Shown here one piece after another: positions 4-47,500 of a DNA stretch of 64,000 nt. The translations under genes were made by a program, and so were the position numbers. The notes below the pieces were generated by a model. That model ran no database searches. It saw only the letters and a program-made list of their open reading frames with translations, and was not told the origin of the DNA. Position 1 is the first letter of the stretch. Each line of letters begins with the position of its first letter. The stretch is from positions 1 through 64,000 of IMG/VR virus record IMGVR_UViG_3300045974_000132; one strand, 5' to 3'.

Positions 4-3000
4 ATGCAACCTACTATTGCATTCTCGTTTGCTCTTAATCTTCCGATCAACATCGTGCAATACATTGTTCAAGCTAAGGACAAAGTCAGCCTTGCTTCTT
101 TGAACGTATGGGCATCTGTTTGGGCATCTGCTATGATGAAGCCACCCGGTATTAAGGGTACGGGCTTGCAGACAAACAAGATTCCGCGTTACGTGCTTAT
201 GCCTTCTGCTTCTAGCTACCTATCTAAGAAGCGTGAAGAACTCGGCTTGTACTCAGAGCCAGGCCGTTCAAACAAAGACGGTATATATATCACTGAGCGC
301 GGTAACATTTCTTATCTGCCTAAGCAAACAGAAGCAGTAGAAGAGAATGCCAAGGCTTATGAGAAAGTTCTTGAAGACAGCTTGGCTCTAAGCTATGAGG
401 CAGGTACTCCTCTCATTACTAGCCAAGAAGGTAGTGCTGGTTCGATCTTCGATCTAGCTAGTCCTGAGTATAAGAGTAAGATCAGAATGACCAAGAGCCA
501 GTTACATGGCTTCAAGGGTTGTATGCAGACTTACAATTGGGACTTGAATTGCATTATCACGACTTCTGTTGTCAGCCCTGATCGTTTTGTTAGCCAGAAG
601 CTTGTGGGATGCTCTATTCCTGATGAACTAAACCTTGCCAACTACATGAGGACAGACTTCATGAAGGGCATGTGCAACATGTTCTCAGACTCTACGATTA
701 AAGAGGGTGCAAAGCGCATCAAGCCTGAGCCGAAGCACTTTGCTGATCTGCCTTCTGCTATTACCGATAGTTCCTTGTTCCTTAACTTCTCTCAAGCTTA
801 CAACATGCTTGAGAAGCGCAAACTTGTTCCTGGCTTGAAGGAACTAATCGACCGTTCAATGGCATCTTTGAAGCTCAAGTCACTCCGTGATGAAGAAGTT
901 TCCATGTTTGAAATTGATCGCTTCGATAGCAACAAGACTATTTACGGTAACTTCTTAAAGCCCGATCTTGGCTTTAGCTTAGTCGGTGACTCTGATGCAA
1001 ACAATGCGTCATTGCTTCTACCTAATACAGGTAAGACAATTCTGCACTACTTAACGGTTGTTGCAAATGATGCTCGCGCTCTGGGTAGAAGCAACCTAGC
1101 TGCTTACTGCATCAAGGAGAACGTTGATCCTGCTGATACGGGTCGCTTCTTTGACTCACAGACTCATGCAATCCATGAGTTTGAAAACCTATTTAAGTAT
1201 GTAGGTGGTCAAATATTCCTGCAAGCAATGAAAGCTATTGTTGCCGTATCGTCTAAAGACCTTATGACTATCGGGGAAGAAACTGATCCCAATGATAAGA
1301 ACTCTTTCGCAGGCTTCTCTGCGCTACAGTCAGAAGTTGTTCCGTTCTGCTTGATGTTTAGCAAATACGTTACCGACTTGAAGGAAGCTATCTTCAAGAA
1401 GGCTGAAGAGATTGAAGATACAAACAAGCATCCTAAAGTCTCTGAAGAAGAGTTGAACATTGCAGGTAGTCGTGCCCCGACTGCTAATCGTCCGGGTATG
1501 CAGTTGTTCCCGCACCAAGCAGAGTGTTTGGCAATTCTAAAGAACCATCCTCGCTTTGCAGTGCTTGACATTGCACCAGGTGGCGGGAAATGCCTTGTTG
1601 GAGATAGCTTAGTACCTACTTCTGACGGTATTCTTTCCTTGAAGGAAGTATACGCTCGTTCAGACGTTTCTACTAATAAGCGTGGTTTCCAAGAGTATAT
1701 TACATCTGTTGTATCTCACGAAAATCGTGTAGAGAAAACCGACTTTGCTTACTCAACCGTCGGTATTACGCATAAAGTAAAACTATCTGACGGTACTGTG
1801 ACGCAGGGTTTGCCTGAACATAAGCTATGGGCAGTACCTCTTACGTCTAATGCCCCTGAATTTATTAGGTTGGATAACTTACGTAAAGGAGATTGGCTGC
1901 CCAAAGCTTTAGGTACTGAACTCTATCCTAAGAAGACCCCTATTCTGTCTTTCAATGGACAAAAACATACTCTTACAGAAGAATTAGCTGAGATTTTAGG
2001 CTGGCTAGTGGCAGAAGGTTATGTAGTAAAAGACCGTTGTCACTTTGAACAACATAGTCCTGAAATGATGGCCCGTTATATAAACAAAGCAGAAACTTTG
2101 TTTGGTACAGGCTCCGTAGTTATACGTAAAGGTACGACGACCTCGGCTAAATTCTCAGAGAAAGCTGTGTTTGAATTTGTTCGAGACCTTATGACTTTAG
2201 GAACTTCTGCTTTCAAGGAAGTACCTTTGTGCATTCGTACTGCACCTAAGAAGTATCAACAAGCTTTCTTAAGGTCTCTATTTGAGGGTGACGCTAGTAT
2301 CTATCATGGAAGTCAAGGTAGAAACCAGAGTCGTATTTGGAAGTTTGAGTATTGTACAATAAGTAAGACACTTGTGCACCATGTAAAAGCAATGCTTGAC
2401 AACATGGGTATTCTCACTAGCTTAAAAACAGGCAACGCGTACAAGTCTAATGGGCACGATCACGTTAAACGTGTATATCGCTTGTTTATTAATTGGAGAG
2501 CACTGCCTAAGCTTGCACAAGAAATTGGTTTCCTTAGCACTGCTAAAACGTCTTTGCTAGAAGAAGCTGTTAGTCATGTGGAGTTCGTTTCAACCTCTGC
2601 GCAGCAAACTACAAATACTAAAGTAGGTAGTGCAGAAAATCGTATACCTGGCTACGAGCTAGCAACCTTTGTTAATCTTCGTATTCGTGAAGTTCTTAGC
2701 ACATACACGTATGAAGTACCTAAAACAAAGAACGGCGCAGGGGGCAGGACAGAACCTTGGTCTATTATGAAAGTAATGCGTGATGCAGAGCTAGGCCGTA
2801 AGTCACTACCCGCTTCGTACGGAAATGATGCTACAAATAAATACTCAGTTGAGCGCCTTTTCCGTATAATCGAAGGGGTGCCCAAGGAAGCTAAGAAGGA
2901 GCTGCTTTCTGACTATTATGTTGCACAAGCTATTGATTCCTTAAAATACTTTGTAGCCAACACTTGGGTACAGGTTAAGTCTTCACGCAAAGCAAAAGAA

Positions 3001-6000
3001 GAGCAGGTATATGATATTAGTGTACCGGGCCCGCACTCCTACGTAGTTAATGGCATATATGGCCATAACACGACCTTAGGTATTGCTGACATTTCAATGA
3101 CGTATGCTGACGGATTGATTAAGCGTCCGTTTATCATCTGCCCTAACGGTCTTGTAGGTAACTGGGCTGAAGATATTCACAAGCACATGGAAGGACGTTG
3201 GAACGTAATCCCAGTAACTACTGAGACTTACGGGGCTTGGGGTGATGAACGCCTTACTGAAATGATTAAGAGTGCTCCTACGAATACAGTAGTTGTCGTA
3301 GGTAATAGCTTCTTAGGCAATCGTGGCAAGTTCCAACTGATCTTAGGTAATGCTGTAGAGAACGTTTCTGATTCACTAGAGTTCTGCAAGAAGTTCCATC
3401 CGGATTATATCTTTATTGATGAATCCCATCGGATGCGCAACCTAGGCTCTGGTATTCATAAGATCGTTAAGTCTATGATGCAGATTAGTAGCGTAAAGTA
3501 TGGTCGTATCGGTACAGGTACTTTCATTCAGAACGTTCTGTCGGATGCTGTCGGTCAAACTGCTCTTTACAATGCTCAAGTCTTCCGTACTAAGGAAGAG
3601 TTTGATGCAAGCAACAAGGCTATGATTTCATCTATCGGTGGAGAAGATGTGTATGACTACACACCTGATGCTCCTGCTAAGGTGAAACGTCGTTTAAGTG
3701 AGTTTGCAACAATCATTTCTTACAAGCGTAAGGAATGGGCGTTCATGCTTCCGCTGCCTGTAGAAACGTTTATCTCTGTATCGTTTGATGATGCAGAAGA
3801 CCCTGAAATGGGTCGTGCCCATCGTATGTTCTACGATGCTGTACTGAAACAAACTATGGAAGAACTGAAGACTGACAAGGTACTTCAGAAACTTCTAAAG
3901 GGTAGCTCAGAAGACGACGAAGATGACGATGCTGATGATACGCCTGAAGGTAGCACTCCTGATAGCAAGGATGGAAAAGATCGCACTGTAACCACTGCTG
4001 AAGGTACTAAGATTGACGTTACTGACGGTGATGATGACAGTGATAATCTTGATAAGCTCGAAGCTGCTTTAAATCCTTACTTGCAACGGCTTGAGCGCAT
4101 CCTAACGGATCCGTTAGGTGATGAAGACTTAGCAGAAGTTGCTAAAGAGTTCTTCGGAGAAGCAACCCGTGATACTTTCGTAACACCTAAAGTCTCTAAG
4201 GTAATCGAACGTATCAAGAAGAACTTTGAAAGCAATGAGTGGCGTAAGGGCATGGATATTAAGTCCTCTGACATTGTTGATTTCAATGGCAAATCTTATA
4301 TCTTCAAGTCTGAAGAGCCCATGGGCAAGACAAAGACCAAGTCTCTTATTGCCCCTGACGAAGATACCGAAAACTGGAAACCTCAGTCTAAGGGTAAGGT
4401 ACTAGTCTTCTGTCGCTTTACTCGATCTGTCGATGCTATCTATCGTGCACTGCCTGCTGATCTGAAGAAGCAAGCTGTTGTATTCCATGGTGAAGTCGAA
4501 GGTAACAAGTGGGAGAATCTCGAAGCGTTCAAGAATGATCCTAAGATCAATATTCTGATCGCAAATGAAATGGGTATCTCTGAAGGGCACAATCTTCAGA
4601 TGGCTTCACGCTTCATTCGTGTTGAATCTCCTTGGGCACCGGGTGAGCTTGACCAGTCTTCATCGCGTATCTTCCGCCCTGACGTATCAGGTAAGTATGA
4701 ACGTCAAACAATCTTCCTTGATTGGATTATTTGTGACGGTACGCTAGAAGTTGCGAAGATGGGCCGACTGATTTCTAAGATGCTGCGGAAAGCACAGTTC
4801 GATGAACTGGACAATCCTAAATATTACAAGAATCTCAATCCTTTGAACTTGCCTGTTATTAAGATGTCCCTTGACAACATCAAGACATTGAACAAGATGG
4901 CCGATCTTTGTGCTATTGCAGGCGTAGGGGATACGAAAGAGCCTAATTCCAGTAGCTACATTGGGCAGTACGGTTATCTAGTAGGTGAAATGGCTGAAGA
5001 GTTTCGTGAAATGAAGAAGACGAAACGTGCTTACATGATTGATGTTAAGCCTACTCCGATGCCTGATGATGCTAAGGTGATTGAGTTCACACCGTGGGTG
5101 CCTAATATGAAGGTGCCTGATCGTCATGATGAAGGTTTGCTATCGCTCAAGGGTGTTCTACAAGAAGAGGATCATCCTCTGACTATTGCATTCAAGAAAG
5201 ATAAGCGTGCCTTAAACGGTCAGTTTGTCCGATGTGAGTTCGGCTTAGGTACTATCATAGGGGTATCAACTTCAAAGAATTCTTCTAGTGACGAGGATGA
5301 AGATCCCGGAGTATCTGTTAGTAAAGTGAAGATCGAACTTTCTCAGGGTGGTAAGGTTGAATCTTTGTCTGCTTCAAAGGTATATCTGGCAACTAAGATT
5401 ACCGAAAAGACAAAGAGCTCCATGAATAAGAAAGCTCCGAAGATCACGAAAGAAGATAAGGAACGCACTTCTGGTAATGCTAAGAAGGCTGAAGTCGCGC
5501 TTACTCGTGCTGCTAAACGTGAGAAGGACTTTGTCAAGAAGGTGGCTGATGTTAAGCGTAAGCCTAAAGCTGTTGAAGAGCCTGAAGACGCTTCAGAAGA
5601 AACGATGGACATTTCGTTGTATCCTGTAATCTACAACGAATTCTTGGCGCTGGAAGCAGTACCGGAAGATGCCACTGTATCTCTGAAGCAATACGGCTTT
5701 ACGAAGTTTGGCAACTATGCTTGGCTACCTGTTAAGACTTATGCCAACTTTACGAAAGTGTTGGAGTATATTGAATCGAAATATACCCTAGCTCCTAAGA
5801 CGATTAAGCTCCTAGATAGCTTGCACGATAGCTTCAATAGTGGTCGAGGTCGTAAGTTTGCTGTTGAGCTTGCACCTACTTCAATGCTTCCGCAGTTCTA
5901 TCGTCTCCGTCACACAATGACTGTGATTAAGGACAAGCGTAAGCCTGATCTGAAACTATACCCTGTCATCTTGAATGGTAGCTTGCTGTTGGTTGTAGAT

Positions 6001-6231
6001 ATTGCAACCAATCCTGTAATTCGTAAGATCCTGAACAAGACTATTGTGGGTACTTCACCTGCAGTCAAGTTCCAAGAAGCTGACGGTCTTGAGATTGAGT
6101 TCTTTGATCGTAAGTCTAGCTTGGTTAATAAGGTCAAGGAACTTCGTCAAGCAGGCTTCAATGTTATCAACATTGAGGAGTTGAAAGAAGAAGTGGGCTC
6201 GCTTAATCTGAAGCAAGTTTCAACCAAGTAA
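4..6231 (+). CDS. SNF2/SWI2-type SF2 helicase-like ATPase precursor containing an intein; probably 5'-truncated because the frame is open to base 1
   Basis: Q-motif QLFPHQ, Walker A DIAPGGGK|T (split by intein), motif II IFIDESH, motif III GTGTFIQN, motif IV KVLVFCRF, motifs V/VI EGHNLQ...SPWAPGELDQSSSRIFR. Confidence 0.9.
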   Translation: MQPTIAFSFALNLPINIVQYIVQAKDKVSLASLNVWASVWASAMMKPPGIKGTGLQTNKIPRYVLMPSASSYLSKKREELGLYSEPGRSNKDGIYITERGNISYLPKQTEAVEENAKAYEKVLEDSLALSYEAGTPLITSQEGSAGSIFDLASPEYKSKIRMTKSQLHGFKGCMQTYNWDLNCIITTSVVSPDRFVSQKLVGCSIPDELNLANYMRTDFMKGMCNMFSDSTIKEGAKRIKPEPKHFADLPSAITDSSLFLNFSQAYNMLEKRKLVPGLKELIDRSMASLKLKSLRDEEVSMFEIDRFDSNKTIYGNFLKPDLGFSLVGDSDANNASLLLPNTGKTILHYLTVVANDARALGRSNLAAYCIKENVDPADTGRFFDSQTHAIHEFENLFKYVGGQIFLQAMKAIVAVSSKDLMTIGEETDPNDKNSFAGFSALQSEVVPFCLMFSKYVTDLKEAIFKKAEEIEDTNKHPKVSEEELNIAGSRAPTANRPGMQLFPHQAECLAILKNHPRFAVLDIAPGGGKCLVGDSLVPTSDGILSLKEVYARSDVSTNKRGFQEYITSVVSHENRVEKTDFAYSTVGITHKVKLSDGTVTQGLPEHKLWAVPLTSNAPEFIRLDNLRKGDWLPKALGTELYPKKTPILSFNGQKHTLTEELAEILGWLVAEGYVVKDRCHFEQHSPEMMARYINKAETLFGTGSVVIRKGTTTSAKFSEKAVFEFVRDLMTLGTSAFKEVPLCIRTAPKKYQQAFLRSLFEGDASIYHGSQGRNQSRIWKFEYCTISKTLVHHVKAMLDNMGILTSLKTGNAYKSNGHDHVKRVYRLFINWRALPKLAQEIGFLSTAKTSLLEEAVSHVEFVSTSAQQTTNTKVGSAENRIPGYELATFVNLRIREVLSTYTYEVPKTKNGAGGRTEPWSIMKVMRDAELGRKSLPASYGNDATNKYSVERLFRIIEGVPKEAKKELLSDYYVAQAIDSLKYFVANTWVQVKSSRKAKEEQVYDISVPGPHSYVVNGIYGHNTTLGIADISMTYADGLIKRPFIICPNGLVGNWAEDIHKHMEGRWNVIPVTTETYGAWGDERLTEMIKSAPTNTVVVVGNSFLGNRGKFQLILGNAVENVSDSLEFCKKFHPDYIFIDESHRMRNLGSGIHKIVKSMMQISSVKYGRIGTGTFIQNVLSDAVGQTALYNAQVFRTKEEFDASNKAMISSIGGEDVYDYTPDAPAKVKRRLSEFATIISYKRKEWAFMLPLPVETFISVSFDDAEDPEMGRAHRMFYDAVLKQTMEELKTDKVLQKLLKGSSEDDEDDDADDTPEGSTPDSKDGKDRTVTTAEGTKIDVTDGDDDSDNLDKLEAALNPYLQRLERILTDPLGDEDLAEVAKEFFGEATRDTFVTPKVSKVIERIKKNFESNEWRKGMDIKSSDIVDFNGKSYIFKSEEPMGKTKTKSLIAPDEDTENWKPQSKGKVLVFCRFTRSVDAIYRALPADLKKQAVVFHGEVEGNKWENLEAFKNDPKINILIANEMGISEGHNLQMASRFIRVESPWAPGELDQSSSRIFRPDVSGKYERQTIFLDWIICDGTLEVAKMGRLISKMLRKAQFDELDNPKYYKNLNPLNLPVIKMSLDNIKTLNKMADLCAIAGVGDTKEPNSSSYIGQYGYLVGEMAEEFREMKKTKRAYMIDVKPTPMPDDAKVIEFTPWVPNMKVPDRHDEGLLSLKGVLQEEDHPLTIAFKKDKRALNGQFVRCEFGLGTIIGVSTSKNSSSDEDEDPGVSVSKVKIELSQGGKVESLSASKVYLATKITEKTKSSMNKKAPKITKEDKERTSGNAKKAEVALTRAAKREKDFVKKVADVKRKPKAVEEPEDASEETMDISLYPVIYNEFLALEAVPEDATVSLKQYGFTKFGNYAWLPVKTYANFTKVLEYIESKYTLAPKTIKLLDSLHDSFNSGRGRKFAVELAPTSMLPQFYRLRHTMTVIKDKRKPDLKLYPVILNGSLLLVVDIATNPVIRKILNKTIVGTSPAVKFQEADGLEIEFFDRKSSLVNKVKELRQAGFNVINIEELKEEVGSLNLKQVSTK
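1591..3069 (+). mobile_element. Intein (493 aa) with LAGLIDADG homing endonuclease, inserted in the helicase P-loop
   Basis: N-terminal block CLVGDSLV, C-terminal VYDISV...YVVNGIYGHN followed by Thr as +1 nucleophile. LAGLIDADG-like LAEILGWLVAEG and FLRSLFEGDA, block H ISKTLVHHVKAMLDNMGI. Removal restores GGGKT. Confidence 0.93.
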
Positions 6232-16538: not shown

Positions 16539-18172
16539 TGGCGCTACTACCTAAGATATATGTTCGTGAAAAGGTATTCATACCTATCAAACATATACGC
16601 AGTAAAGAAGACCTGCAAGACGCATATACGAAACGGTTCTTTGATGATAAGGCATGTAAAGCATGTGATTATCTCAAAGACCGTTTTTGCGATATGTGCG
16701 AAGTATGCCCTGCTTACAAAGGTACTGTTAAACTTTACAGCCATAAGAACGTAAGAGGCATAAACTATATAGGTCTTCCTATAGGTGACAAGCGCAACAT
16801 TGAAAAGTATGCAGGCATTGTATTTGAAGACTTTAAGATTGTTGATAGGCGCAAAGTAGTTCCTTTCGATTACAAGATCAAGTTTCTTATTAAGCTACGC
16901 CCGCACCAACAGAAGTTGGTTGATACATTCTTCAAGAAGAAGTACGGTTTGATCGAAGCCCCTCCTCGCTTCGGTAAGACTGTGTGTATGCTGGATATTA
17001 GCATCAAGCTAGGTAACAAAACGCTGGTGCTAGCTTCCCAACATGAATTCCTTCAACAGTATATCTACCATATTGAGGGTAATGAGAAGAAGGGTATTCC
17101 TAAATGTACAAATCTGCCAGAGCTTCAACTAAAGTATAAAAAGAAGCTCTACGGTTTTCCAAAGACCGATGCTGACTTTGAAAATTTCCAAATCTTTACC
17201 ATGACGTATCACCAGTTCATGGATGAAGTATCTGGTAAGAATCGTTTCAAGAAGATTGAGCATAAGATAGGTCTTGTTGAGATTGATGAAGCGCACAAAG
17301 CAGCCGCTGCTGAGTTTAGTAAGGTTGTGTCTATGTTCCCTGCACGTTATCGTCTGGGTGTAACAGGTACTGTTGATCGTAAAGACGGTAGGCACTACGT
17401 TATAAAGAAAGTTATTGGGCCTGTTGTTGCTCGGTCAGCTGTTGAGTCAATGACACCAAAAGTATTCATCCATGAAACAGGTATTAGGATTGCACGGGTA
17501 CCTAAGCAATGGACGTTTGCAATGCTGAATCTAGCGCGTAATAAAAAGCGCAATGATCTACTTATCAAGCAAGCGGTAGCGGATGTTAAAGCAGGGCATA
17601 GCGTTGTGATACCGTTGATGTTCAAGAAGCACGTTATGGACATTGTTAATGGTATTAACGATCTGTACGGCCGACCTATTGCTGAAGCGTTCATGGGTGG
17701 GGGTGGTGATAAGAATAAGGTGCATCGTGACAACATCTTGTCAGGTGTATCTAAAGGTAAGATCAAAGTCGTTGTAGGTATTCGTTCGCTGTTGCAATTA
17801 GGCTTGAATGTACCGCGCTGGTCTATGATCTATACAGCAATGCCCATATCGAACGAACCTAACTACAAGCAAGAAACTTCGCGTGTTCGGACTCCGATGG
17901 AAGGTAAATTACAGCCTGTCATTCGTTTGTTCTATGATGAAGCCATGGGCCCCTCAGTGGGTTGTGCACGTAACTGTGTTACTCACATGCAGAAGTTTAA
18001 GTATGAGTTCTCGAAGGATCAAAAGACAAGGGAAGCTTTAGCCTACTTTGCAACTAAAGGGCGTCGTAGTAATAGTGATAATGACGATGACCAGTTTGCT
18101 CCGTCTCAAGCAAGTCACGATGAAGATGATGCCGGTAGTAACATGGGTCGCGCGAGGGCAGGAAGGCGATAA
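16538..18172 (+). CDS. SF2 DEAH helicase (UvsW/ResIII-like) with Cys-rich N-terminus
   Basis: KLRPHQ, EAPPRFGKT, EIDEAH, LGVTGTVDRKDG, LGLNVP, QETSRVRT; N-terminal CKAC...CDMCEVC. Confidence 0.9.
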   Translation: MALLPKIYVREKVFIPIKHIRSKEDLQDAYTKRFFDDKACKACDYLKDRFCDMCEVCPAYKGTVKLYSHKNVRGINYIGLPIGDKRNIEKYAGIVFEDFKIVDRRKVVPFDYKIKFLIKLRPHQQKLVDTFFKKKYGLIEAPPRFGKTVCMLDISIKLGNKTLVLASQHEFLQQYIYHIEGNEKKGIPKCTNLPELQLKYKKKLYGFPKTDADFENFQIFTMTYHQFMDEVSGKNRFKKIEHKIGLVEIDEAHKAAAAEFSKVVSMFPARYRLGVTGTVDRKDGRHYVIKKVIGPVVARSAVESMTPKVFIHETGIRIARVPKQWTFAMLNLARNKKRNDLLIKQAVADVKAGHSVVIPLMFKKHVMDIVNGINDLYGRPIAEAFMGGGGDKNKVHRDNILSGVSKGKIKVVVGIRSLLQLGLNVPRWSMIYTAMPISNEPNYKQETSRVRTPMEGKLQPVIRLFYDEAMGPSVGCARNCVTHMQKFKYEFSKDQKTREALAYFATKGRRSNSDNDDDQFAPSQASHDEDDAGSNMGRARAGRR

Positions 18173-18792
18173 TGGAAAAACTAATACTAAAACATTTGCC
18201 TAGAGAACGGGAGAAAGTTCTCACAGCAAGAGGGGTACCGCAAGCTGACTTCATTCACGGTAAGGAGCAATATGATGTTGTTCCTAATTTAGTTAAGTAT
18301 GAAGTAGAACTTGCACGTATGCCTACTAGGGCAGTAGGTACTGCAAAGCAACTGAAAGCACTAGAGTCTATCTGTACAAATCCTTTACGTTCAAGTTACG
18401 TGTTGGGTATTAGTAGCTTTCCTAGTGATGCTCTTGCAAAAGCTCTTGCAATCCATATATTCAATCAATCAATGATTTCATGGCAACGAAGGCATCGTCC
18501 AGGTAGAGTACTTCCTATTTGGCATCGTGTATTCGGAGGCTTCAATGATAATCTTCGTGACAAGCCTATTGAAGAAACACCTAGCTTGTTGGTGTTATCG
18601 AATATCAATGAAGCAAGTAGCTCCTACAAGCTTGAGAAGGTGCGAGACATATTGGAGAAGTATTCTCATATACCGCGCATTGTTGTTTTAAGCGGAGCCG
18701 ACCCTTTGACATTCTTTGCAAACAAATTGTACTGCCCTATCAATGCAGGTATATTGATTGGCCCTACAAATCGTGTTAAGGAAATGGGATGA
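18172..18792 (+). CDS. Degenerate DnaC/IstB-like AAA+ protein (possible helicase loader)
   Basis: Layout S-Y-V-L-G...ALAKALAIHI ... PSLLVLSNI.E.S..K...VRDILEKY...PRIVVLS mirrors the DnaC fold but lacks GKT and the Walker B DD. Confidence 0.5.
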   Translation: MEKLILKHLPREREKVLTARGVPQADFIHGKEQYDVVPNLVKYEVELARMPTRAVGTAKQLKALESICTNPLRSSYVLGISSFPSDALAKALAIHIFNQSMISWQRRHRPGRVLPIWHRVFGGFNDNLRDKPIEETPSLLVLSNINEASSSYKLEKVRDILEKYSHIPRIVVLSGADPLTFFANKLYCPINAGILIGPTNRVKEMG

Positions 18793-19019
18793 CAGACGTT
18801 GACAACTTTCTTAAAGACGTTGCAAAGCAAGGTAGGCTCAAGGAGTTTACGGTAGTGTGTGATGAATCCAATAACACACCTGAAGATATAGATCAACGTA
18901 GGCTTAATGTAGATGTTATTTTTTACGGTTCTTTAGCTGAACACGTTCGCAAGCGGTTGGAAGAATCTACTGATAGGACTGCATCGTATGGCTGCCATAC
19001 CACCGAAGACAAAGTATAA
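18789..19019 (+). CDS. 76 aa protein resembling an isolated tail-sheath C-terminal segment
   Basis: FLKDVAKQGRLKEFTVVCDESNNTPEDIDQRRLNVDVIF aligns ungapped (16/39 identical) with the sheath segment encoded at 26068-26184. Confidence 0.65.
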   Translation: MTDVDNFLKDVAKQGRLKEFTVVCDESNNTPEDIDQRRLNVDVIFYGSLAEHVRKRLEESTDRTASYGCHTTEDKV

Positions 19020-19494
19020 TGCTTTAGTCTTAGACTTCGACGGTGCTCTATTCCCACGAAGATTCTTTTTAACTCCGACGGGTGCTGATCCTGTATTGGT
19101 ACAAGTAATAAATACATTGTGCCAACACTATGATTTCCGAATCGTTATCTCAGCAGGCATGCAAGAACAAGGTATAGATAAGTGTAAAGAAGAGTTAAGC
19201 AAAGCAGGTATTAGTGCAGACTATGTTATGCCTAATAACTGGTCGACTCTAAGCGTAGGCTTTCATATACGCGACCGATACAAGCAGGTTGAACGCTGGT
19301 ACGATCAGTATAAAGATTCAATTGGTAGGATGTTGATCTTTGATGATGAACATTGCCCATTCCAATCGCCTATAGCTGCTTACTGGATGAGGTGTGATGA
19401 AGAACACGGATTACGCTTATTCGATCTTACTACTCTGTACGGTGAATACTCAAAATTAATGGAACATAAAGAAGACATAAATGAAAACAAGTGA
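18988..19494 (+). CDS. HAD-superfamily phosphatase (HAD_SAK-like)
   Basis: Motif I LVLDFDGAL, motif II FRIVISAG, motif IV MLIFDDE; ATAGGA RBS. Confidence 0.75.
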   Translation: MAAIPPKTKYNALVLDFDGALFPRRFFLTPTGADPVLVQVINTLCQHYDFRIVISAGMQEQGIDKCKEELSKAGISADYVMPNNWSTLSVGFHIRDRYKQVERWYDQYKDSIGRMLIFDDEHCPFQSPIAAYWMRCDEEHGLRLFDLTTLYGEYSKLMEHKEDINENK

Positions 19495-20143
19495 TATTGT
19501 AAGGCAGCGTATTCTGGAAGCTAATGCTCCTTTCTTTGCAAATGACAACATCGCAAGCTTTGTAACGCCCGAAGAGTTGGCTGGTATTCAAGAAGAAGTT
19601 GAATTTCATATGGACAATCTACTTCGAGCTTTGGTAATCGACGTTGATAACGACCATAACTCGAACGGAACTGCCAAGCGCGTAGCAAAGATGTTTGTGC
19701 GCGAGTTCTACAAAGGCCGTTACGTTGAAATGCCTAACGTTACTGTCTTTCCTAATGCTAAGAAGATTGACCAACTGTATATCGTTGGCCCTGTTAGCGT
19801 TAAGAGTACGTGCAGCCATCATCTAGTACCTATCGTAGGTAAGGTATGGGTCGGTTGCATTCCGGGCGACGATCTAAGCGGCTTATCGAAGTTTGCTCGT
19901 TTAGCTGAATGGATTTTTCGTCGTCCTCAAATTCAAGAAGAAGCTACCCAACAGTTGGCAGAACTTCTTGAAGAGATTCTCAAGCCTAAAGCTTTAGCTC
20001 TCATTGTCAAAGCACAACATATGTGTATGTGCCATCGTGGTGTAGAAGACCCGGACAGTGAGCATACAACCAGTTACATGGGTGGTGCCTTTAAGCAAGA
20101 TCCGGCACTGCGTATGGAATTCTTGACACTGATGAACAAATGA
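19481..20143 (+). CDS. folE: GTP cyclohydrolase I
   Basis: TAKRVAKMF, VKSTCSHHLVPIVG, GLSKFARL...RRPQIQEEAT, AQHMCMCHRGV (Zn ligands intact). Confidence 0.95.
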   Translation: MKTSDIVRQRILEANAPFFANDNIASFVTPEELAGIQEEVEFHMDNLLRALVIDVDNDHNSNGTAKRVAKMFVREFYKGRYVEMPNVTVFPNAKKIDQLYIVGPVSVKSTCSHHLVPIVGKVWVGCIPGDDLSGLSKFARLAEWIFRRPQIQEEATQQLAELLEEILKPKALALIVKAQHMCMCHRGVEDPDSEHTTSYMGGAFKQDPALRMEFLTLMNK

Positions 20144-21075
20144 TTAGCACACTCACACTGCCGTATTTGACTTGTATTGACCATGCTTACGTGGATGATA
20201 TTGGACGTATTCGTGGTCGTTCATACCATGCTTCCTTCACAGTATCGGGTAAGGTTGATGAAGAAGGTGAGAAGGTTGTTGTAGACTTCTCTAAGGTAAA
20301 GAAGCTCATTAAGTCGATTGTCGATGACCATGAGTACGGATTCGACCACAAGCTTTGGGTTGATTCTAATTGCAAAGAAGATGCAAACCCTAGAATTGCT
20401 ACACCCTTTGCACTTCTAAATATTCCAGAGAATGCAATACGCTCTTTCCCTAAAGCTACACATGTACATGCTTCTTCGGCGTGTTTTATCATAGCCCAGC
20501 ATGTACAGGATGTTCTGCTAAATGTTCACGGTATTGAGGTAGACATTAAGTGTGCCCTAAATACCAGCCCTCTGTTTATTCAAGCAGGTGGTGTCTACGG
20601 AATGTTTAGCTACGTTCATGGCCTGCGCGATAGTTCAGCATACGGTTGTCAGAATCTAGCACATGGACATCTTAGTTATCTGCAATTGATTCCTAAGGTG
20701 GACATTATTCGCATGGTCGTTGATCCTGTTCATTGTGCTGATGAAGATAATGCTTTAACAGCCCTTGATAAAGTATGCAATGAAATCTGCAAAGACCTGG
20801 ACGATACGATTTTCATATACGGTGCTAATGTTTGGACAGCAAGCACTGACGAGGTGTCTATTGCTTATACTTCCAAGTCACGCGGATCTATGGGCGGTAA
20901 GTTCAAGAATAACGAGCGTCAAAAGACGGTAGTTCTTGAAACAGAAACTACTGTTGAATACCTTGCAGAATATATCAATGCTAAGTATGGTGAGCTTTTA
21001 CGTGAAGCCGGCGTTGATAAGTTTATCGTAAGTGAGGGCCTTTCTAAGGGTGTTCTGTTTGAAGTAACGTCTTAA
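20140..21075 (+). CDS. queD: QueD-like 6-carboxytetrahydropterin synthase, tandem T-fold type
   Basis: IDHAY...RGRSY.ASFTVSG...VVDFSKVKK.IK...DHKL and a second half FSYVHGL....YGCQNLAHGH; translationally coupled to folE (ATGA). Confidence 0.75.
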   Translation: MISTLTLPYLTCIDHAYVDDIGRIRGRSYHASFTVSGKVDEEGEKVVVDFSKVKKLIKSIVDDHEYGFDHKLWVDSNCKEDANPRIATPFALLNIPENAIRSFPKATHVHASSACFIIAQHVQDVLLNVHGIEVDIKCALNTSPLFIQAGGVYGMFSYVHGLRDSSAYGCQNLAHGHLSYLQLIPKVDIIRMVVDPVHCADEDNALTALDKVCNEICKDLDDTIFIYGANVWTASTDEVSIAYTSKSRGSMGGKFKNNERQKTVVLETETTVEYLAEYINAKYGELLREAGVDKFIVSEGLSKGVLFEVTS

Positions 21076-21087
21076 GGACATTTCAAA

Positions 21088-21633
21088 ATGGAAATATCAA
21101 GACGCGGGTTTCTAAAGCTATTTGCTACGCTACCCGCTGCTTTTGCTGTAACGCAACTAACACCAGCGTTTGCTAAAATCCCGGACTTAACGCCGATAGT
21201 CGTTCCAGAGACCAAAGAAGACTTTGGATTCTTTGATATATCGGACATTGAGATTAGGTTCTCTGACTTTCGCGTGTATGCTTCGTCTATGAATGTTGTT
21301 CATAATCATGGACCATCCTTCAGAACGCCCTATGAAGTTGTATCGGACGAACGTGGCCAATACTTATACTCAGAACTGCGAATACAAACTACTTCCCTAA
21401 CGGGTAGATGCTTTGCCAATCTAGGTGATAAGCTAAGAACTTGGTTTGAAGCGGCTAGGAATATGGGTCCTCCTGACTCTTATAAGAAAGATGCTGAAAT
21501 CTGGTATAAGGGTGAGCGTATTGCTACCTTAAAAGGCGCCTTCCTTAAGTCAATAGAAGCTCAAATGTTCGGTAATCTGATGAACTTTGATTTTACAATG
21601 AGCTATGATGTGTTGGAACATTTAAATGGATAA
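21088..21633 (+). CDS. Twin-arginine (Tat) signal protein with a T4 gp19-like tail-tube-type domain
   Basis: MEI-SRRGFLK-hydrophobic-AFA signal; C-terminal W...A...G.P.SYKKDAEI....LKGAF..SI.....F.FTMSYD resembles the gp19 family. Signal call is strong, tube call moderate. Confidence 0.6.
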   Translation: MEISRRGFLKLFATLPAAFAVTQLTPAFAKIPDLTPIVVPETKEDFGFFDISDIEIRFSDFRVYASSMNVVHNHGPSFRTPYEVVSDERGQYLYSELRIQTTSLTGRCFANLGDKLRTWFEAARNMGPPDSYKKDAEIWYKGERIATLKGAFLKSIEAQMFGNLMNFDFTMSYDVLEHLNG

Positions 21634-24579: not shown

Positions 24580-26274
24580 ATGGGTCTTCCATCCTCCCCA
24601 GGTAGTTATGTGATAGAGCGTGATCTATCACAGCGAGTTCGTGCTGTATCCACATCAATCGGTGCTATCGTCGGAGCCTCCAAGAAGGGCCCGATAATGA
24701 CACCTACACTGGTTACAAACAAACAAGAATTTATTGAGACATTCGGACCTCCCGATTGGCGTTTTAGCTTGATGCACTATGCGGCTCTAAAGTTTCTTGA
24801 GAATAGTAGCCAGCTATTAGTTACACGGGTCATCAATGATGATACCAATCACGGCCCTGTGCCGTTAACAGCCGGAGCTTTCTACTCTGTAGATTCAGTT
24901 ACGGCTGTAGCACCGCGTCCTACTCTGTCAGTATTTGACGATGCTAACGGTAATACTCTGGGTAAGTTTGATCCGTTCAATACGTATTCATTCAACCCAA
25001 ATCAACCGGGTATTGCAAACGTCTTATTCTTCATATGTGCTGTCGATCCGGGTGACTGGAATAACACTCTATACATTGAAGTACGCCCAGCTTACAAGGC
25101 AGGCTTGTCTTCATTCGATGAAACATATGATGATCCGTATTCATTCTGGATTGATGTATATGTTAATCATGACAACCCGCGTGATAAGCCTGTTGAGTCA
25201 TGGCTTGTAAAGCGCAACTCAGAGATTAACGGTTTCGGCAATCAGATGTTCATGGAAGATGTTATCAATAAAGCTTCCAAGTATATTCGTGTTCGCAATA
25301 ATGAGTTTGCTCCTACAACTGTTAAGGTTGTAGAACCTGCTAAGGTATTCCTTGAAGGTGGCACTAACGGTCACTATCTAGCTTTCGGTCAAGTAATGAG
25401 AGCATGGGATCTTTATAAGGATACTGAGCATATCAATGTCAATATCTTGATTCAAGGTGGTGCTCCGATCGGCATGAGCAACTTGCAAGATATTTGCGAC
25501 ATCCAACGTAAAATGGCAATCATTGCTGAAGAACGTATGGATGCTGTTGCGATTCTTGACATCCCTTCACCGGAACAAGAAACTGCCCGTGCTGTTGCAT
25601 ATGCTGTTCAAGAGCTAAACCTTGATAGTAGCTATGCTGCCATCTATACTTGTGACATACGAGTACCGGATGTGTACAACGACATGGAAGTCTGGGTTCC
25701 GCCTTCTGGTTATGTTGCTGCAAACTGTGCATTGACTGACGAACAATATGAAGTCTGGTTCTCACCGGCTGGTATGTATCGTGGTCGCATGGATGAAGTC
25801 AACAAATCAAAATACATTTACAACCAAGGTCATCGAGACGCCCTCGACTACGTAAATGTTAACGCTATTCGTTATTTCCCTAAAGGCCAAGGCTGGCGTA
25901 TTTGGGGATCGAATACCCTACAGAGTATGGCGTCTGCTCTGTCGGATCTGAATGTTCGTCGTCTGATGAACTTCATTGAAAAGTCCGTACGCATTGCCAA
26001 TATGTATAGCGTGTTTGACCCGAATGACCAAATTCTTCGTAGTCGGGTTACATCAATCATTGAACGTTTCTTATCTCCAATTAAGAACGCCGGTGGTCTA
26101 TATTGGTTCCAAGTTATTTGTGATGACAGCAATAACACAAGCGACACCATTGCAGCAGGCATTCTTGTTATTGATGCTTACTTCGATCCCGTTATTACTG
26201 CAAAACGAATTCATCTTCGTGCCAACTTAATGGCAACCGGCGCTGACTTTAAGTCCTATCTTATCAATAAATAA
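24580..26274 (+). CDS. Contractile tail sheath protein (T4 gp18-like)
   Basis: SPGSYVIERDLS, GAIVGASKKGP...LVTNK.EF.ETFG.P, WVPPSG.VAA, WFSPAG..RG, NVRRLMNFIEK, FQVICDDSNNT; GGAG RBS. Confidence 0.93.
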   Translation: MGLPSSPGSYVIERDLSQRVRAVSTSIGAIVGASKKGPIMTPTLVTNKQEFIETFGPPDWRFSLMHYAALKFLENSSQLLVTRVINDDTNHGPVPLTAGAFYSVDSVTAVAPRPTLSVFDDANGNTLGKFDPFNTYSFNPNQPGIANVLFFICAVDPGDWNNTLYIEVRPAYKAGLSSFDETYDDPYSFWIDVYVNHDNPRDKPVESWLVKRNSEINGFGNQMFMEDVINKASKYIRVRNNEFAPTTVKVVEPAKVFLEGGTNGHYLAFGQVMRAWDLYKDTEHINVNILIQGGAPIGMSNLQDICDIQRKMAIIAEERMDAVAILDIPSPEQETARAVAYAVQELNLDSSYAAIYTCDIRVPDVYNDMEVWVPPSGYVAANCALTDEQYEVWFSPAGMYRGRMDEVNKSKYIYNQGHRDALDYVNVNAIRYFPKGQGWRIWGSNTLQSMASALSDLNVRRLMNFIEKSVRIANMYSVFDPNDQILRSRVTSIIERFLSPIKNAGGLYWFQVICDDSNNTSDTIAAGILVIDAYFDPVITAKRIHLRANLMATGADFKSYLINK

Positions 26275-44552: not shown

Positions 44553-44575
44553 TCCACTTGAATTGGGAAAACACC

Positions 44576-47500
44576 ATGCTTTTAACAGTTAAACCATTCT
44601 ACATGGCTGTCGCACAGACTCTTTCAGGGTTTGATCCGTACTATGATGCGGTAACTCTTTTGCTCCATGCAGAAGGTGCTAACGGCAGTCAAGTTATTAC
44701 CGACGAAAAAGGCCATACAGCAACGGTTGGTTCCGGAGTAACTCTTTCTACAGCTACTAGCATGTTTGGCAGTAGCTGTTTGAAGTTTGACAACACCGCA
44801 ACTGCAACCATGTACTATAACGGTAGTTCGGATTTCGCTTTTGGTTATGATGACTTCACTATCGAGGCATTTGTAAAAACAAACTCCTTTGGCACGACGC
44901 TACAGACCATCTTTGACACGCGGCCTGCGAATGTTAATGGGGCTTACATCTGTCTGTATCTGGAGACTACAGGTGCTATTTCTACCTACGTCAACTCTGT
45001 TGTGCAGCTAACCTCTGCGACAAAACTGTCAACTAACACGTGGGCACACGTTGCACTAAGCCGCACCAACCAAGTAACAAGTTTGTTTATTAACGGTGCA
45101 CTTCAAGGCAGCGTAGTAGATGCAACAAACTACCTCAACGGTGCAAGCCGTCCAAGTATCGGTAATAGTGGGTACTACTCTGGAGGTACGACTCCTTGGA
45201 ATGGTTACATTGATGAACTTCGTGTGACTAAGGGAGTTGGTCGCTATATCGCAGGGGCGGTCCCGGCGTTTACGACCGATGCAAACACGAAACTGCTTGC
45301 ACACTTTGAAAACAACCTGACAGACGTTGTTGGTAACACGATCACCAATTCTGGCGCGACGTTCTCAAGCACGATCTCGAAGAGCGGTTCTTACAGCGCA
45401 TACTTCAACGGTGCTTCTTATGCTGCTGCCCCTGCCGCTGTCGGTCAATTCGGCTCCGGCGAGTTTACGGTTGAAGGTTGGGCATATCTACCTGCCAACG
45501 GTGGCTATCAAACGTTGTTCGGTACGTTGAACCACCCAACAGATGGTTGGGCAGTCCAGCAAAATCGTGTAATGTGGTTTGACGGTAGCGGTTTCCACAC
45601 GGGTACTTATTCAGCGTCGGTTCCAGCAAATTCTTGGGCGCACGTTGCTTTTGTGCGACTTGGTAACACTATCACCGTCTACATTAACGGTGCTTCTGTC
45701 TTCTCCGGTGCTGTTTCTGGAGCATTGACGTCAAACGCTGCATTGCGCTTCGGTTATCGTCCTGACGGTAACGAGTTCATGACAGGGTATTTGGACGAAG
45801 TTCGTGTCAGCAACGTGGCTAGATACACGGCCAACTACACGGTGGCGATGCCCGCACCAACCACGATCCCGACTTCGACAATGCAATCTACTCTTGAGGG
45901 CGCATTCGATCCGTATTACGGTAATACGGTCTTAATGATTCACGGTAATGATACCGTTGGTTTAGATACAACCTTTGTAGATAGTTCTATCAACCAAGCT
46001 GCGATAACGCGGTACGGTAATGTGCGTCAAGGTCTAAATAATCCATTTGGTACTACAACTGATGGCAGTATTTACTTCAATGGTAGTACTGATTATTTAA
46101 CACTACCTTATTCTAATATAGCTACCCAGTGGTGGAATAGTGCGGGATTTACTATAGAAGCTTGGGTATACCCTATTGCGTATACCTCCTCTACTTTAAA
46201 CTCTAATACCGACCCTGTATTAGTAGGTAATCAGACTGTAGGTAGTGCGTCAAGCTTCTGGTCTTTCGGTTTAGATAGTGCCGGTCATGTAAAGCTGTAT
46301 TACTTTACCGGCTCACAAAATCGTATAATAGGTACAGGTGTAGTTGCTCTCAATACCTGGACACATATTGCAATGGTTGTTTCTGGTACCACTGTTAAGT
46401 TTTATATTAACGGTGTTCTTGATACTACTAGCGCAATATCAGGTACTCCGCAAAGCGGTTCAACCTCACCCTTTGTTGTAGGTGCTGGCGGTAACGGTTA
46501 CTTCAACGGTTTTATTTCTAATATGCGGATAGTTGCAGGTACCTCTATATACACTACAGGGTTTATACCTCCTACGTCCTCCTTGACAAACATCGCAGGT
46601 ACGCAGCTTCTGTTAAATACCAAAAACAATGGGTATGTTAGTGATAACACTCAGGTATTAGACTATTCCTCTAATACGCTACTCTTGACTAATGCTGGTA
46701 GTACATCACTAGTACCTGCTTCACCTTTCGGTACATTAGGTCAATCTTTATCCTTCAATGGTAGCACACAGAAGCTGACTACCTCGGCGAACGCAGGTCT
46801 TGCGTTCGGTACGGGTGACTTCACTGTTGAGTTTTGGTTGTTCCCGCTGTCTTTTGTAAACTACATTACCTATGTAAGTACTCGTACCGGTGCTAATACA
46901 ACTAGCTGGTCTATAGGTACTCAAGCTGCTGGACAGATACTGTTCTACGCAGGTAGCGAAATCTTGAGGTCTAGTGCAACCTTAACTCTAAATGCTTGGC
47001 AGCACATTGCAATCGTTCGTAAGAACGGTGTTATTAGCGGCTACATCAATGGGGTTAAGTATGCAGCAGACGTAGCCAATACTTACAACTTTACAGCCAA
47101 CGTTGCTACAGTTGGTGGTGATCCGACTTTTGGTGAGTTTGCTCCAGCTTATCTCAGCAACGTTCGTATTACCAACAATGCTGTATATTCGGCTCCGTTT
47201 ACTCCTTCAACAACCCCGTTGACTGCTGTATCTGGTACTCAACTGCTAGCGGCCAACAAGCCTTACTCGTTCCTGAGCAATACTGCATTGATGGAAGCAG
47301 GCTCTGGCTTACCTATAGCAGTTAACGGGGCACCTATTAATACGGGTGTATATCCTTTTGCAACACAAAGTAGCTCAATCTTCTTCACAGGTGCTACACC
47401 TGACTATCTGAAGATGACAGCACCTACTACTATCGGTTTTGGTACAGGTGACTATACTGTCGAGTACTGGTTGTTCCCAACAGCTTATGGTGCGACCACA

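What the first reader, a model, noticed from the sequence alone, without database searches (positions are those of the whole stretch)
18789..19019. Stand-alone tail-sheath C-terminal fragment inside the nucleotide-metabolism operon
39 residues of this 76 aa ORF align without gaps to the phage's own sheath C-terminus (16 identities, including CD.SNNT). Its VVCDESNNTPEDID is closer to the T4 gp18-family consensus as I recall it (VVCD..NNTP..ID) than to the local sheath (CDDSNNTSDTIA), suggesting capture from another phage. It overlaps both neighbours, so it is probably translated. Possible roles (inference): a decoy for a structural-protein-sensing defence system, a dominant-negative poison of a competitor's sheath assembly, or a remnant.
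Basis: partly seen in the sequence, partly recalled or inferred. Interest (0 to 1): 0.7.

Follow-up and report, generated by a model that had tools for sequence, protein, structure and literature searches.

The report
Free-standing tail-sheath hairpin mini-protein
A 76-residue gene in an uncultured jumbo phage is a real, conserved small protein built from the "handshake" hairpin of the tail sheath; it always travels with a phosphatase gene, belongs to an undescribed family, and its function is unknown.

Summary
Window 18789-19019 (+) is an intact 76-aa ORF. Residues 4-45 align without gaps to residues 494-535 of the phage's own 564-aa sheath (16/42 identical) and to tail-sheath profiles (phrog_10581, E 5e-10). 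It overlaps both neighbouring genes.

It is not a decaying remnant and not a recent capture. Orthologues occupy the same slot in eight related uncultured lineages, directly upstream of a HAD_SAK_2 phosphatase gene and overlapping its start. Amino-acid identity is 43-57% while synonymous sites are saturated, and codon-position identities are 0.63/0.78/0.41. ORF76 and the HAD gene are present together or absent together.

The conserved core is the sheath helix and beta-hairpin, followed by a family-specific F-x-G-S-L-A-x-x-V helix that sheaths lack. More distant free-standing relatives sit near another HAD_SAK_2, are fused or adjacent to a dNMP kinase, or lie between an RNA ligase and a phosphoesterase. 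None was found in 50,697 GenBank phage records.

In T4 gp18 the matching segment holds the C-terminal domain's only two strands, the docking platform for sheath arms and the tail terminator.

My best reading, which is inference, is an exapted protein-binding module working with the HAD enzyme. The rival is a soluble mimic that binds sheath arms. Function is untested: complex prediction gave no answer and no RNA data exist.

The parts
18789..19019 (+). ORF76: 76-aa free-standing sheath-hairpin mini-protein gene (stop included)
   Evidence: ORF list and sequence; Shine-Dalgarno-like AAGGA 7-12 nt upstream; eight orthologues in the same slot
18798..18923 (+). Residues 4-45: segment homologous to the tail-sheath C-terminal domain (helix, strand, C-D-x-S-N-N loop, strand)
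   Evidence: tblastn to own sheath, 16/42 identical, E 3e-6; phrog_10581 E 5e-10; T4 gp18 585-623 E 1e-7; AF2 model H2-13, E20-23, H31-35, E42-45; Foldseek top hits are all sheaths
18921..18980 (+). Residues 45-64: family-specific amphipathic helix (F45, G47, S48, L49, A50 and V53 invariant in orthologues); sheaths have no counterpart
   Evidence: Alignment A3 invariant columns; AF2 helix 47-64; the own sheath continues with strands instead
18172..18792 (+). Upstream 206-aa backbone gene (phrog_20094, annotated 'DNA polymerase' in RefSeq relatives); its stop overlaps the ORF76 start (ATGA)
   Evidence: conserved in Lu11, Alexandra, Y3 and many IMG/VR jumbo phages
18988..19494 (+). HAD_SAK_2 phosphatase gene; its start lies 32 nt inside ORF76; constant partner of ORF76
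   Evidence: Pfam PF18143 E 5e-9; DxDG and DD motifs invariant; present or absent together with ORF76
19481..21075 (+). GTP cyclohydrolase I (19481-20143) and PTPS/QueD-like (20140-21075): variable members of the cassette
   Evidence: Pfam and PHROG hits; absent from L011 and L122, and FolE absent from L134
21626..22189 (+). P-loop kinase-like gene (AAA_28; phrog_2107 'thymidylate kinase', weak match)
24580..26274 (+). Resident tail sheath gene (564 aa); residues 494-535 (26059-26184) are the segment homologous to ORF76

Best explanation
ORF76 is a genuine, translated small gene. It belongs to an undescribed family of free-standing mini-proteins made from the second helix and the beta-hairpin of the tail-sheath C-terminal (domain I, 'handshake') domain, closed by a new amphipathic helix. 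Shown: it is under purifying selection. It is inherited as a two-gene module with a HAD_SAK_2 phosphatase gene whose start it overlaps, so the two are probably translationally coupled. The module sits in a variable cassette between backbone genes of a PaBG/Lu11-like jumbo phage. Inferred: the hairpin, which in sheaths is a beta-sheet-augmentation docking platform, has been exapted as a small protein-binding module. It would work with the neighbouring phosphotransfer enzyme, for example as a trans-acting specificity, cap or regulatory subunit of the capless HAD, in nucleotide or nucleic-acid-end metabolism rather than in tail assembly. Roughly 0.9 confidence that it is a real conserved gene and family; roughly 0.4 that its working partner is the HAD or a related enzyme.
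For: Gene reality. Eight orthologues occupy the identical slot between the 206-aa gene and HAD, with intact frames, lengths of 58-76 aa (two with N-terminal extensions), and conserved 8-53 nt overlaps into HAD. NG86 dN is 0.35-0.63, like HAD (0.23-0.53), while dS is saturated. Identity by codon position is 0.63/0.78/0.41. The invariant residues include a non-sheath helix motif.

Linkage. ORF76 and HAD are co-present in all 8 close lineages and co-absent in 30 more distant relatives' loci, whereas FolE, PTPS and w181 come and go. In L134 the 206-aa protein is 92% identical to the window's, but identity falls to 52% (ORF76) and 62% (HAD) exactly at the ORF76 start.

Independent contexts of distant homologues. 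P0006 lies one gene from a HAD_SAK_2 that is only 24% identical to the window's. P0022 is a fusion of the mini-domain to a dNMP kinase (phrog_139 E 4e-18) within a DCD/Y16D/ThyA cluster, and P0025 lies directly upstream of a separate dNMP kinase. P0012 lies between an Rnl1-like RNA ligase and a phosphoesterase. No free-standing member examined lay in a recognisable tail-gene block.
Against: There is no direct evidence of binding: the three-chain prediction (sheath + HAD + ORF76) returned 'no answer'. Some family members have contexts without such enzymes (P0075 among an HTH protein, a PTH2-LysM protein and unknowns; P0005 after a C5-methylase fragment). Phage genes are tightly packed, so adjacency and overlap alone are weak evidence. 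The eight orthologous loci count as one evolutionary observation of linkage. The Cys and two Asn residues that are invariant in sheaths are also invariant here, which could mean the original sheath-type contact is retained. No biochemical precedent is known to me for a sheath-derived subunit of a HAD enzyme.
Confidence: 0.4

Rival explanations
1. Soluble handshake-acceptor mimic. [quoted passage not shown] It would act either as a holdase or cap that tunes the phage's own sheath assembly, or as a dominant-negative poison of co-infecting myoviruses, induced prophages or tailocins.
For: The family aligns to T4 gp18 585-623. The gp18 C-terminal domain 548-631 holds just two antiparallel strands and two helices, and these strands form the shared sheet with terminator gp15 (PMC12929629). 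In P1 and Mu the domain-I hairpin accepts the N-arm and C-arm pair of the adjacent ring (PMC10304247; PMC11915804). C24, N28 and N29 are invariant in mini-proteins and in 22 diverse sheaths. The gene lies 5.5 kb upstream of the sheath on the same strand. In Lu11 the homologue of the upstream gene carries an annotated putative middle/late promoter.
Against: Most relatives with the same two sheath paralogues lack the gene, so it is not a core assembly factor. It travels with HAD, not with tail genes. Short orthologues (58 aa) lack the N-terminal sheath helix. Its motif matches the resident sheaths less well than foreign ones. The fusion to a dNMP kinase is hard to explain. Complex prediction gave no support, though that is also no evidence against.
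Confidence: 0.25
2. Decoy for a host defence system that senses the conserved sheath C-terminal motif, soaking up the sensor before late proteins appear.
For: The most conserved epitope of all contractile sheaths is kept, while the rest of the protein is free to vary. Many jumbo-phage genomes carry several free-standing copies.
Against: My literature searches surfaced no sheath-sensing defence system. Nothing in the contexts points to anti-defence loci. The strict linkage to HAD is unexplained. The hypothesis is entirely untested.
Confidence: 0.07
3. Non-functional remnant of a sheath gene 3' end left by the insertion of the enzyme cassette, or a recent capture from a T4-like phage.
For: The origin may well have been such a remnant: the homologous piece is the 3'-proximal part of a sheath gene and sits at the 5' edge of a mobile cassette.
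Against: The frame is intact in eight lineages despite saturated synonymous divergence. Codon-position identities show the coding pattern. A new helix motif is conserved, and dN is as low as in the neighbouring enzyme. A single synonymous change and no replacement separate L007 and L008, while the flanking genes differ by 5-6%.
Confidence: 0.03

Closest known systems
Tail sheath protein C-terminal domain (Pfam PF17482 Phage_sheath_1C; T4 gp18 residues 548-631)
   Same: Homologous helix, strand, C-D-x-x-N-N loop and strand, with the same invariant Cys and two Asn residues. The predicted fold matches solved sheaths from phages, pyocin, AFP/PVC and other contractile injection systems.
   Different: ORF76 covers only profile positions 46-86 of 104. 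It lacks the first helix region, the final strands and C-terminal arm, and everything N-terminal (Phage_sheath_1). It ends in a conserved helix that sheaths do not have. It scores below the Pfam cut-off and is encoded away from tail genes, linked to a phosphatase.
PHROG families of small sheath-C-like proteins of unknown function (phrog_16736, 101 positions; phrog_13288, 208 positions), and the many ~100-aa complete-domain proteins in metagenomes
   Same: Free-standing proteins carrying the sheath C-terminal domain. The resident sheath matches both families.
   Different: Those carry the whole domain with the sheath-type strand tail. ORF76 matches phrog_16736 only weakly (E 0.02) and has the helix tail instead. 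Many such database entries may be fragments of sheath genes on short contigs.
Sheath initiator gp25/TssE and tail terminator gp15/gp37/gp24 (small proteins that dock on the sheath by beta-sheet augmentation)
   Same: Conceptually, small proteins that take part in the same four- or five-stranded shared sheets at the ends of the sheath (PMC12929629, PMC11915804, PMC10304247).
   Different: Those proteins supply strands to, or mimic, the handshake and are encoded in tail modules. ORF76 is homologous to the acceptor hairpin itself, has no Pfam match to GPW_gp25 or terminator families, and is not in a tail module.
T4 Pnkp-type end-healing enzymes and 'Swiss Army Knife' RNA-repair proteins (source of the HAD_SAK_2 model); T4 gp1 dNMP kinase
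   Same: The enzymes that ORF76-family genes accompany or are fused to are of these kinds: HAD phosphatase, P-loop kinase, RNA ligase with phosphoesterase.
   Different: I know of no described member of these systems that contains a sheath-derived domain. The fused N-terminal mini-domain of P0022 has no counterpart in GenBank phage dNMP kinases.

Membership tests
Functional tail sheath subunit (T4 gp18 family) | N-terminal and middle sheath domains (Pfam Phage_sheath_1, PF04984) | tested here: not met
   No PF04984 match. The protein is 76 aa, and the open frame extends only 3 codons upstream of the ATG.
Functional tail sheath subunit (T4 gp18 family) | Complete C-terminal domain scoring above the Pfam PF17482 gathering cut-off | tested here: not met
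   15-17 bits against a 26.9-bit cut-off; only profile positions 46-86 of 104 are matched.
Functional tail sheath subunit (T4 gp18 family) | C-terminal arm and strands after the hairpin, needed for the handshake | tested here: not met
   After the second strand, ORF76 and all orthologues continue as a G-S-L-A helix. The resident sheath continues with strand-type sequence.
Homologue of the sheath C-terminal domain hairpin (partial PF17482) | Significant profile similarity plus the invariant Cys and Asn-Asn of the C-D-x-x-N-N loop | tested here: met
   phrog_10581 E 5e-10; phrog_23 E 4.9e-7; T4 gp18 E 1e-7 with the family profile. C24, N28 and N29 are invariant in 20 mini-proteins, and the equivalent residues in 22 sheaths.
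Free-standing hairpin-plus-helix mini-protein family (proposed here) | Own start and stop on contigs where the gene is internal; small size; hairpin motif followed by a G-x-[LFM]-[AT] helix; not part of a sheath gene | tested here: met
   The eight orthologues, together with P0005, P0006, P0011, P0012, P0022, P0036, P0043 and P0072, give 14 cluster representatives with this build among the hits. The loci show complete flanking genes.
Free-standing hairpin-plus-helix mini-protein family (proposed here) | Purifying selection on the protein | tested here: met
   dN 0.35-0.63 with dS saturated; codon-position identities 0.63/0.78/0.41.
Free-standing hairpin-plus-helix mini-protein family (proposed here) | Expression of the protein | not testable with these tools
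   Only DNA metagenome runs hold the sequence, and no RNA run was found.
gp25/TssE sheath initiator (Pfam GPW_gp25) | Sequence membership in PF04965 and location in a baseplate module | tested here: not met
   No such Pfam hit at E <= 1, and the neighbours are enzymes.
phrog_16736 (small sheath-C-like proteins, function unknown) | Significant match to the family profile | tested here: inconclusive
   E 0.02, 15.9 bits, profile positions 32-73 of 101.
Anti-defence decoy or dominant-negative assembly poison | Binding to a host sensor or to a sheath or terminator protein | tested here: inconclusive
   The three-chain complex prediction scored 0.00 with the verdict 'no answer'. It is not evidence either way.

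The most novel reading that the evidence does not exclude
The sheath's universal docking hairpin has been released as a family of free-standing mini-proteins that phages use as soluble mimics. They would cap the handshake arms or terminators of rival contractile machines (co-infecting myoviruses, induced prophages, tailocins), or titrate a host sensor of the sheath motif. Copies are spread through jumbo-phage genomes and expressed from enzyme operons, away from the phage's own tail genes.
Probability: 0.12. Interest if true: 0.8.

Novelty: new variant of a known kind. Interest (0 to 1): 0.5.

Why it matters
The C-terminal hairpin is the single most conserved element of contractile sheaths and the platform on which every sheath ring, initiator and terminator docks. 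This half-domain has been cut loose, given a new helix, kept under selection for a long time, and repeatedly placed beside or fused to nucleotide and nucleic-acid phosphotransfer enzymes. That gives a concrete, cheap test case for how structural-protein pieces are exapted in phages. If it binds sheath arms, it would be a natural inhibitor or chaperone of contractile-tail assembly. If it binds the HAD or the kinase, it would be a new accessory subunit for phage nucleotide or RNA-end metabolism. Either way it names a family that is invisible in cultured-phage databases.

Tried and rejected
- **Megablast of the region against GenBank phages:** no match.
- **Length-limited word search with ORF76 alone:** found only itself. 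The exhaustive HMMER search was needed to find the family.
- **IMG/VR scans seeded with the family alignment or with P0036:** returned almost only full-length sheath genes, because the seed motif is shared. They were of no use for finding free-standing genes, apart from P0075.
- **Alexandra_165 and the L092 75-aa gene:** these small genes lie near the 206-aa homologue but are unrelated to ORF76.
- **dN/dS between orthologues:** dS is saturated or undefined, so only an upper-bound argument is possible. The close pair L007/L008 has one synonymous change in the gene, too few to use.
- **Read laying:** only the source pond metagenome holds the stretch. There are no variants and no RNA.
- **Complex prediction with sheath and HAD:** no answer.
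- **Donor inference by tree and AU test:** 32 columns cannot resolve it.
- **Lu11 middle/late promoter motif:** not found near the gene. Three matches in the window against 1.3 expected, none relevant.
- **Sigma-70 and terminator scan:** no more hits than in shuffled sequence.
- **Search for the deazaguanine transglycosylase family (TGT/DpdA):** none in the genome. The RNA-ligase family search was uninformative because its control failed.
- **tblastn of P0022, P0043 and P0036 against GenBank phages:** no free-standing or fused mini-domain found.

Full report
**Setting.** The window is the first 64 kb of a 286,393-bp IMG/VR virus record with direct terminal repeats and 43.7% G+C. It is an uncultured jumbo phage from a pond metagenome. 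Its sheath, helicase and 206-aa gene place it with the PaBG, Lu11 and Erwinia Alexandra/Y3 group of jumbo myoviruses. Like them it has two full-length sheath paralogues: window 24580-26274, and genome 90771-92360 on the minus strand, 39% identical.

- ORF 18789-19019 (+) encodes 76 residues.
- Residues 4-45 align without gaps to residues 494-535 of the resident 564-aa sheath, with 16/42 identities and E 3e-6 in a window-wide tblastn. The next hit is noise.
- Profile searches confirm homology to tail sheaths: phrog_10581 E 5e-10 and phrog_23 E 4.9e-7. Pfam Phage_sheath_1C matches below threshold, over positions 46-86 of 104.
- The ATGA start overlaps the stop of the upstream gene. The last 32 nt overlap the only possible start of the downstream HAD gene.

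**It is a conserved gene, not debris.** The exhaustive HMMER search of 1.84 billion representatives returned small proteins as the best hits, ahead of any sheath. Their similarity runs past the sheath-like part into residues 46-63.

Fetching their contigs, and those of closer HAD homologues, gave eight lineages with the same arrangement. In each, a small ORF begins at or within a few bases of the stop of the 206-aa gene and ends 8-53 nt inside a HAD_SAK_2 gene.
- Amino-acid identity to ORF76 is 43-57%.
- Synonymous sites are saturated, while dN (0.35-0.63) is like that of the HAD neighbour.
- Over the 40-codon core, identity is 0.63/0.78/0.41 at codon positions 1/2/3.
- Invariant residues are V22, C24, N28, N29, L39, V41 and D42 (shared with sheaths) and F45, G47, S48, L49, A50 and V53 (absent from sheaths).

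A decaying fragment would not keep a frame, a length and a new motif through this much divergence.

**It belongs to the HAD cassette.** Among loci holding a homologue of the 206-aa gene, ORF76 and HAD are both present in all eight close lineages. Both are absent from 30 more distant loci, including Lu11, Alexandra and Y3. FolE, the PTPS-like gene and the 181-aa gene vary. In L134 the helicase and the 206-aa protein are 83% and 92% identical to the window's. Identity then drops to 52% (ORF76), 62% (HAD) and 48% (PTPS-like) from the ORF76 start onward. This marks ORF76 as the first gene of a faster-evolving or exchanged module.

**What part of the sheath it is.** The family profile aligns to T4 gp18 585-623. 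The in-situ T4 structure paper states that the gp18 C-terminal domain (548-631) consists of two alpha-helices and two antiparallel beta-strands. These are conserved in myoviruses and contractile injection systems. The strands form a shared sheet with the terminator gp15, and a helix of the domain contacts gp3 (PMC12929629). In P1 and Mu the domain-I hairpin accepts the N-arm and C-arm pair of the next ring (PMC10304247; PMC11915804).

ORF76 therefore carries the second helix and the only hairpin of that domain, which is the docking platform, but not the arms. This mapping rests on sequence alignment plus the papers; I did not inspect coordinates.
- The AF2 model (15-row alignment, pLDDT 72.6) gives helix 2-13, strand 20-23, short helix 31-35, strand 42-45 and helix 47-64.
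- Its best PDB matches are all sheaths, with weak E-values as expected for 76 residues.
- The 58-aa orthologues lack the first helix, so the minimal unit is the hairpin plus the new helix.

**A wider family.** Beyond the orthologues, 14 cluster representatives have the hairpin followed by a G-x-L-A-type helix. About 30 more have the hairpin with unrelated tails. About 95 small hits look like complete sheath C-termini, many probably fragments on short contigs.

Contexts of the non-orthologous hairpin-plus-helix members I could fetch:
- P0006 lies one gene from a HAD_SAK_2 that is only 24% identical to the window's.
- P0022 is fused to a dNMP kinase in a DCD/Y16D/ThyA cluster.
- P0025 lies directly upstream of a separate dNMP kinase.
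- P0012 lies between an Rnl1-like RNA ligase and a phosphoesterase.
- P0005 lies after a C5-methylase fragment.

P0075, a member with a different tail, sits among unknown genes next to another free-standing sheath-C-like gene in a 314-kb phage.

No free-standing member was found in 50,697 GenBank phage records: every ORF76 hit listed or inspected there fell in a sheath gene, some of them unannotated or misannotated. The only paper hits for the Pfam domain were incidental.

**Mechanism.** Two readings remain.
- *Enzyme partner.* Conserved two-gene linkage, a second linkage to a very divergent HAD_SAK_2, and the fusion or adjacency to a P-loop kinase all point this way. The hairpin would be reused as a protein-binding module that works with phosphotransfer enzymes. 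For a capless HAD it might act as a trans-acting specificity or regulatory subunit. I put this at about 0.4.
- *Soluble mimic.* The retained platform and the invariant Cys/Asn/Asn point to a soluble mimic that binds sheath arms or terminator strands. It could be an assembly holdase or cap, or a competitor poison. I put this at about 0.25.
- *Others.* A defence decoy is possible but has no support (about 0.07). A remnant is contradicted (about 0.03).

The single complex prediction, which offered ORF76 both the sheath and the HAD, gave no answer. No RNA data exist.

**Origin.** ORF76 resembles some foreign sheaths more than the resident ones:
- 50% over 40 aa to 121Q/PBECO4-type sheaths.
- 69% over 32 aa to a metagenomic sheath.
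- 38% and 46% to the two resident sheaths.

The resident sheaths form a well-supported clade without it. However, the AU test does not reject a common clade (p 0.50). The donor is unresolved. In any case the event predates the divergence of the eight lineages.

**Verdict.** This is a real, conserved gene and a new architectural variant of a known domain. It is the founder observation for an undescribed family, and its function is open. Interest is moderate.

Noticed in passing
window 24580-26274 (+) and genome G000:C1:90771-92360 (-): There are two full-length tail sheath paralogues (564 and 529 aa, 39% identical). GenBank relatives (PaBG, Lu11, Erwinia jumbo phages) also show two sheath places per record, so a double sheath gene is a lineage trait.
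   Followed up: partly
window 21088-21633 (+); genome G000:C1:222482-223387 (+) = L223:4483-5388: Phage proteins have twin-arginine-like N-termini (M..RRGFLKL...AFA). The 301-aa protein joins this signal to a sheath C-terminal domain (PF17482, 27.5-29.4 bits, above cut-off). That domain is followed by a sheath-like G-x-x-x-W segment, possibly a permuted sheath core, and the gene lies two genes upstream of a ThyA-like gene. Metagenomic proteins P0019, P0032 and P0086 have the same signal-plus-domain build.
   Followed up: partly
window 19481-21075 (+): GTP cyclohydrolase I and a 311-aa double PTPS/QueD-like gene are present, but no TGT/DpdA family match exists anywhere in the 286-kb genome. A DpdA-type 7-deazaguanine DNA modification pathway is therefore not evident, and the product of this pair is unclear.
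   Followed up: partly
L007 vs L008 (ENA and Logan contigs of a related phage): Divergence is mosaic. The FolE gene is identical over 813 nt while flanking genes differ by 3-6% (206-aa gene 36/618, HAD 30/465). This suggests recent recombination or a sweep of FolE.
   Followed up: no
L127:5001-5849 (P0022) and L133:5001-5842: The mini-domain is fused to a dNMP kinase in one phage (eight wastewater and other contigs). In another phage the same two parts are adjacent separate genes with a 4-nt overlap.
   Followed up: partly
P0035 (187 aa, metagenomic): One small protein carries two copies of the C-D-x-x-N-N hairpin motif in tandem.
   Followed up: no
L139:4001-4186 and L139:6453-6890 (314-kb IMG/VR phage): Two different free-standing sheath-C-like genes (61 aa and 146 aa) lie 2.3 kb apart among an HTH gene and a PTH2-LysM gene. 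Multiple copies per jumbo-phage genome seem common.
   Followed up: partly
Database hits P0047, P0051-P0053, P0059, P0081, P0085, P0087, P0095, P0096 and others: Many proteins of exactly 101-103 aa have the motif at position ~52 and a full sheath-type tail. One Tara record is flagged as a complete gene. They may be a genuine free-standing whole-domain family (compare phrog_16736) or products of split sheath genes.
   Followed up: no
L133:1656-3738: A thymidylate synthase gene is split into 247-aa and 73-aa parts by a GIY-YIG/I-TevI-like homing endonuclease gene. This is the classic td-intron arrangement, here in an uncultured phage.
   Followed up: no
window 18172-18792 (+): RefSeq calls the homologues of this 206-aa protein 'DNA polymerase' (phrog_20094). 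It has no Pfam match, and in Lu11 it lies behind an annotated putative middle/late promoter just upstream of the sheath. The name looks unreliable.
   Followed up: no
window 4-6231 (+) and 44558-51952 (+): There are very large ORFs of 2075 and 2464 aa. I did not examine them.
   Followed up: no
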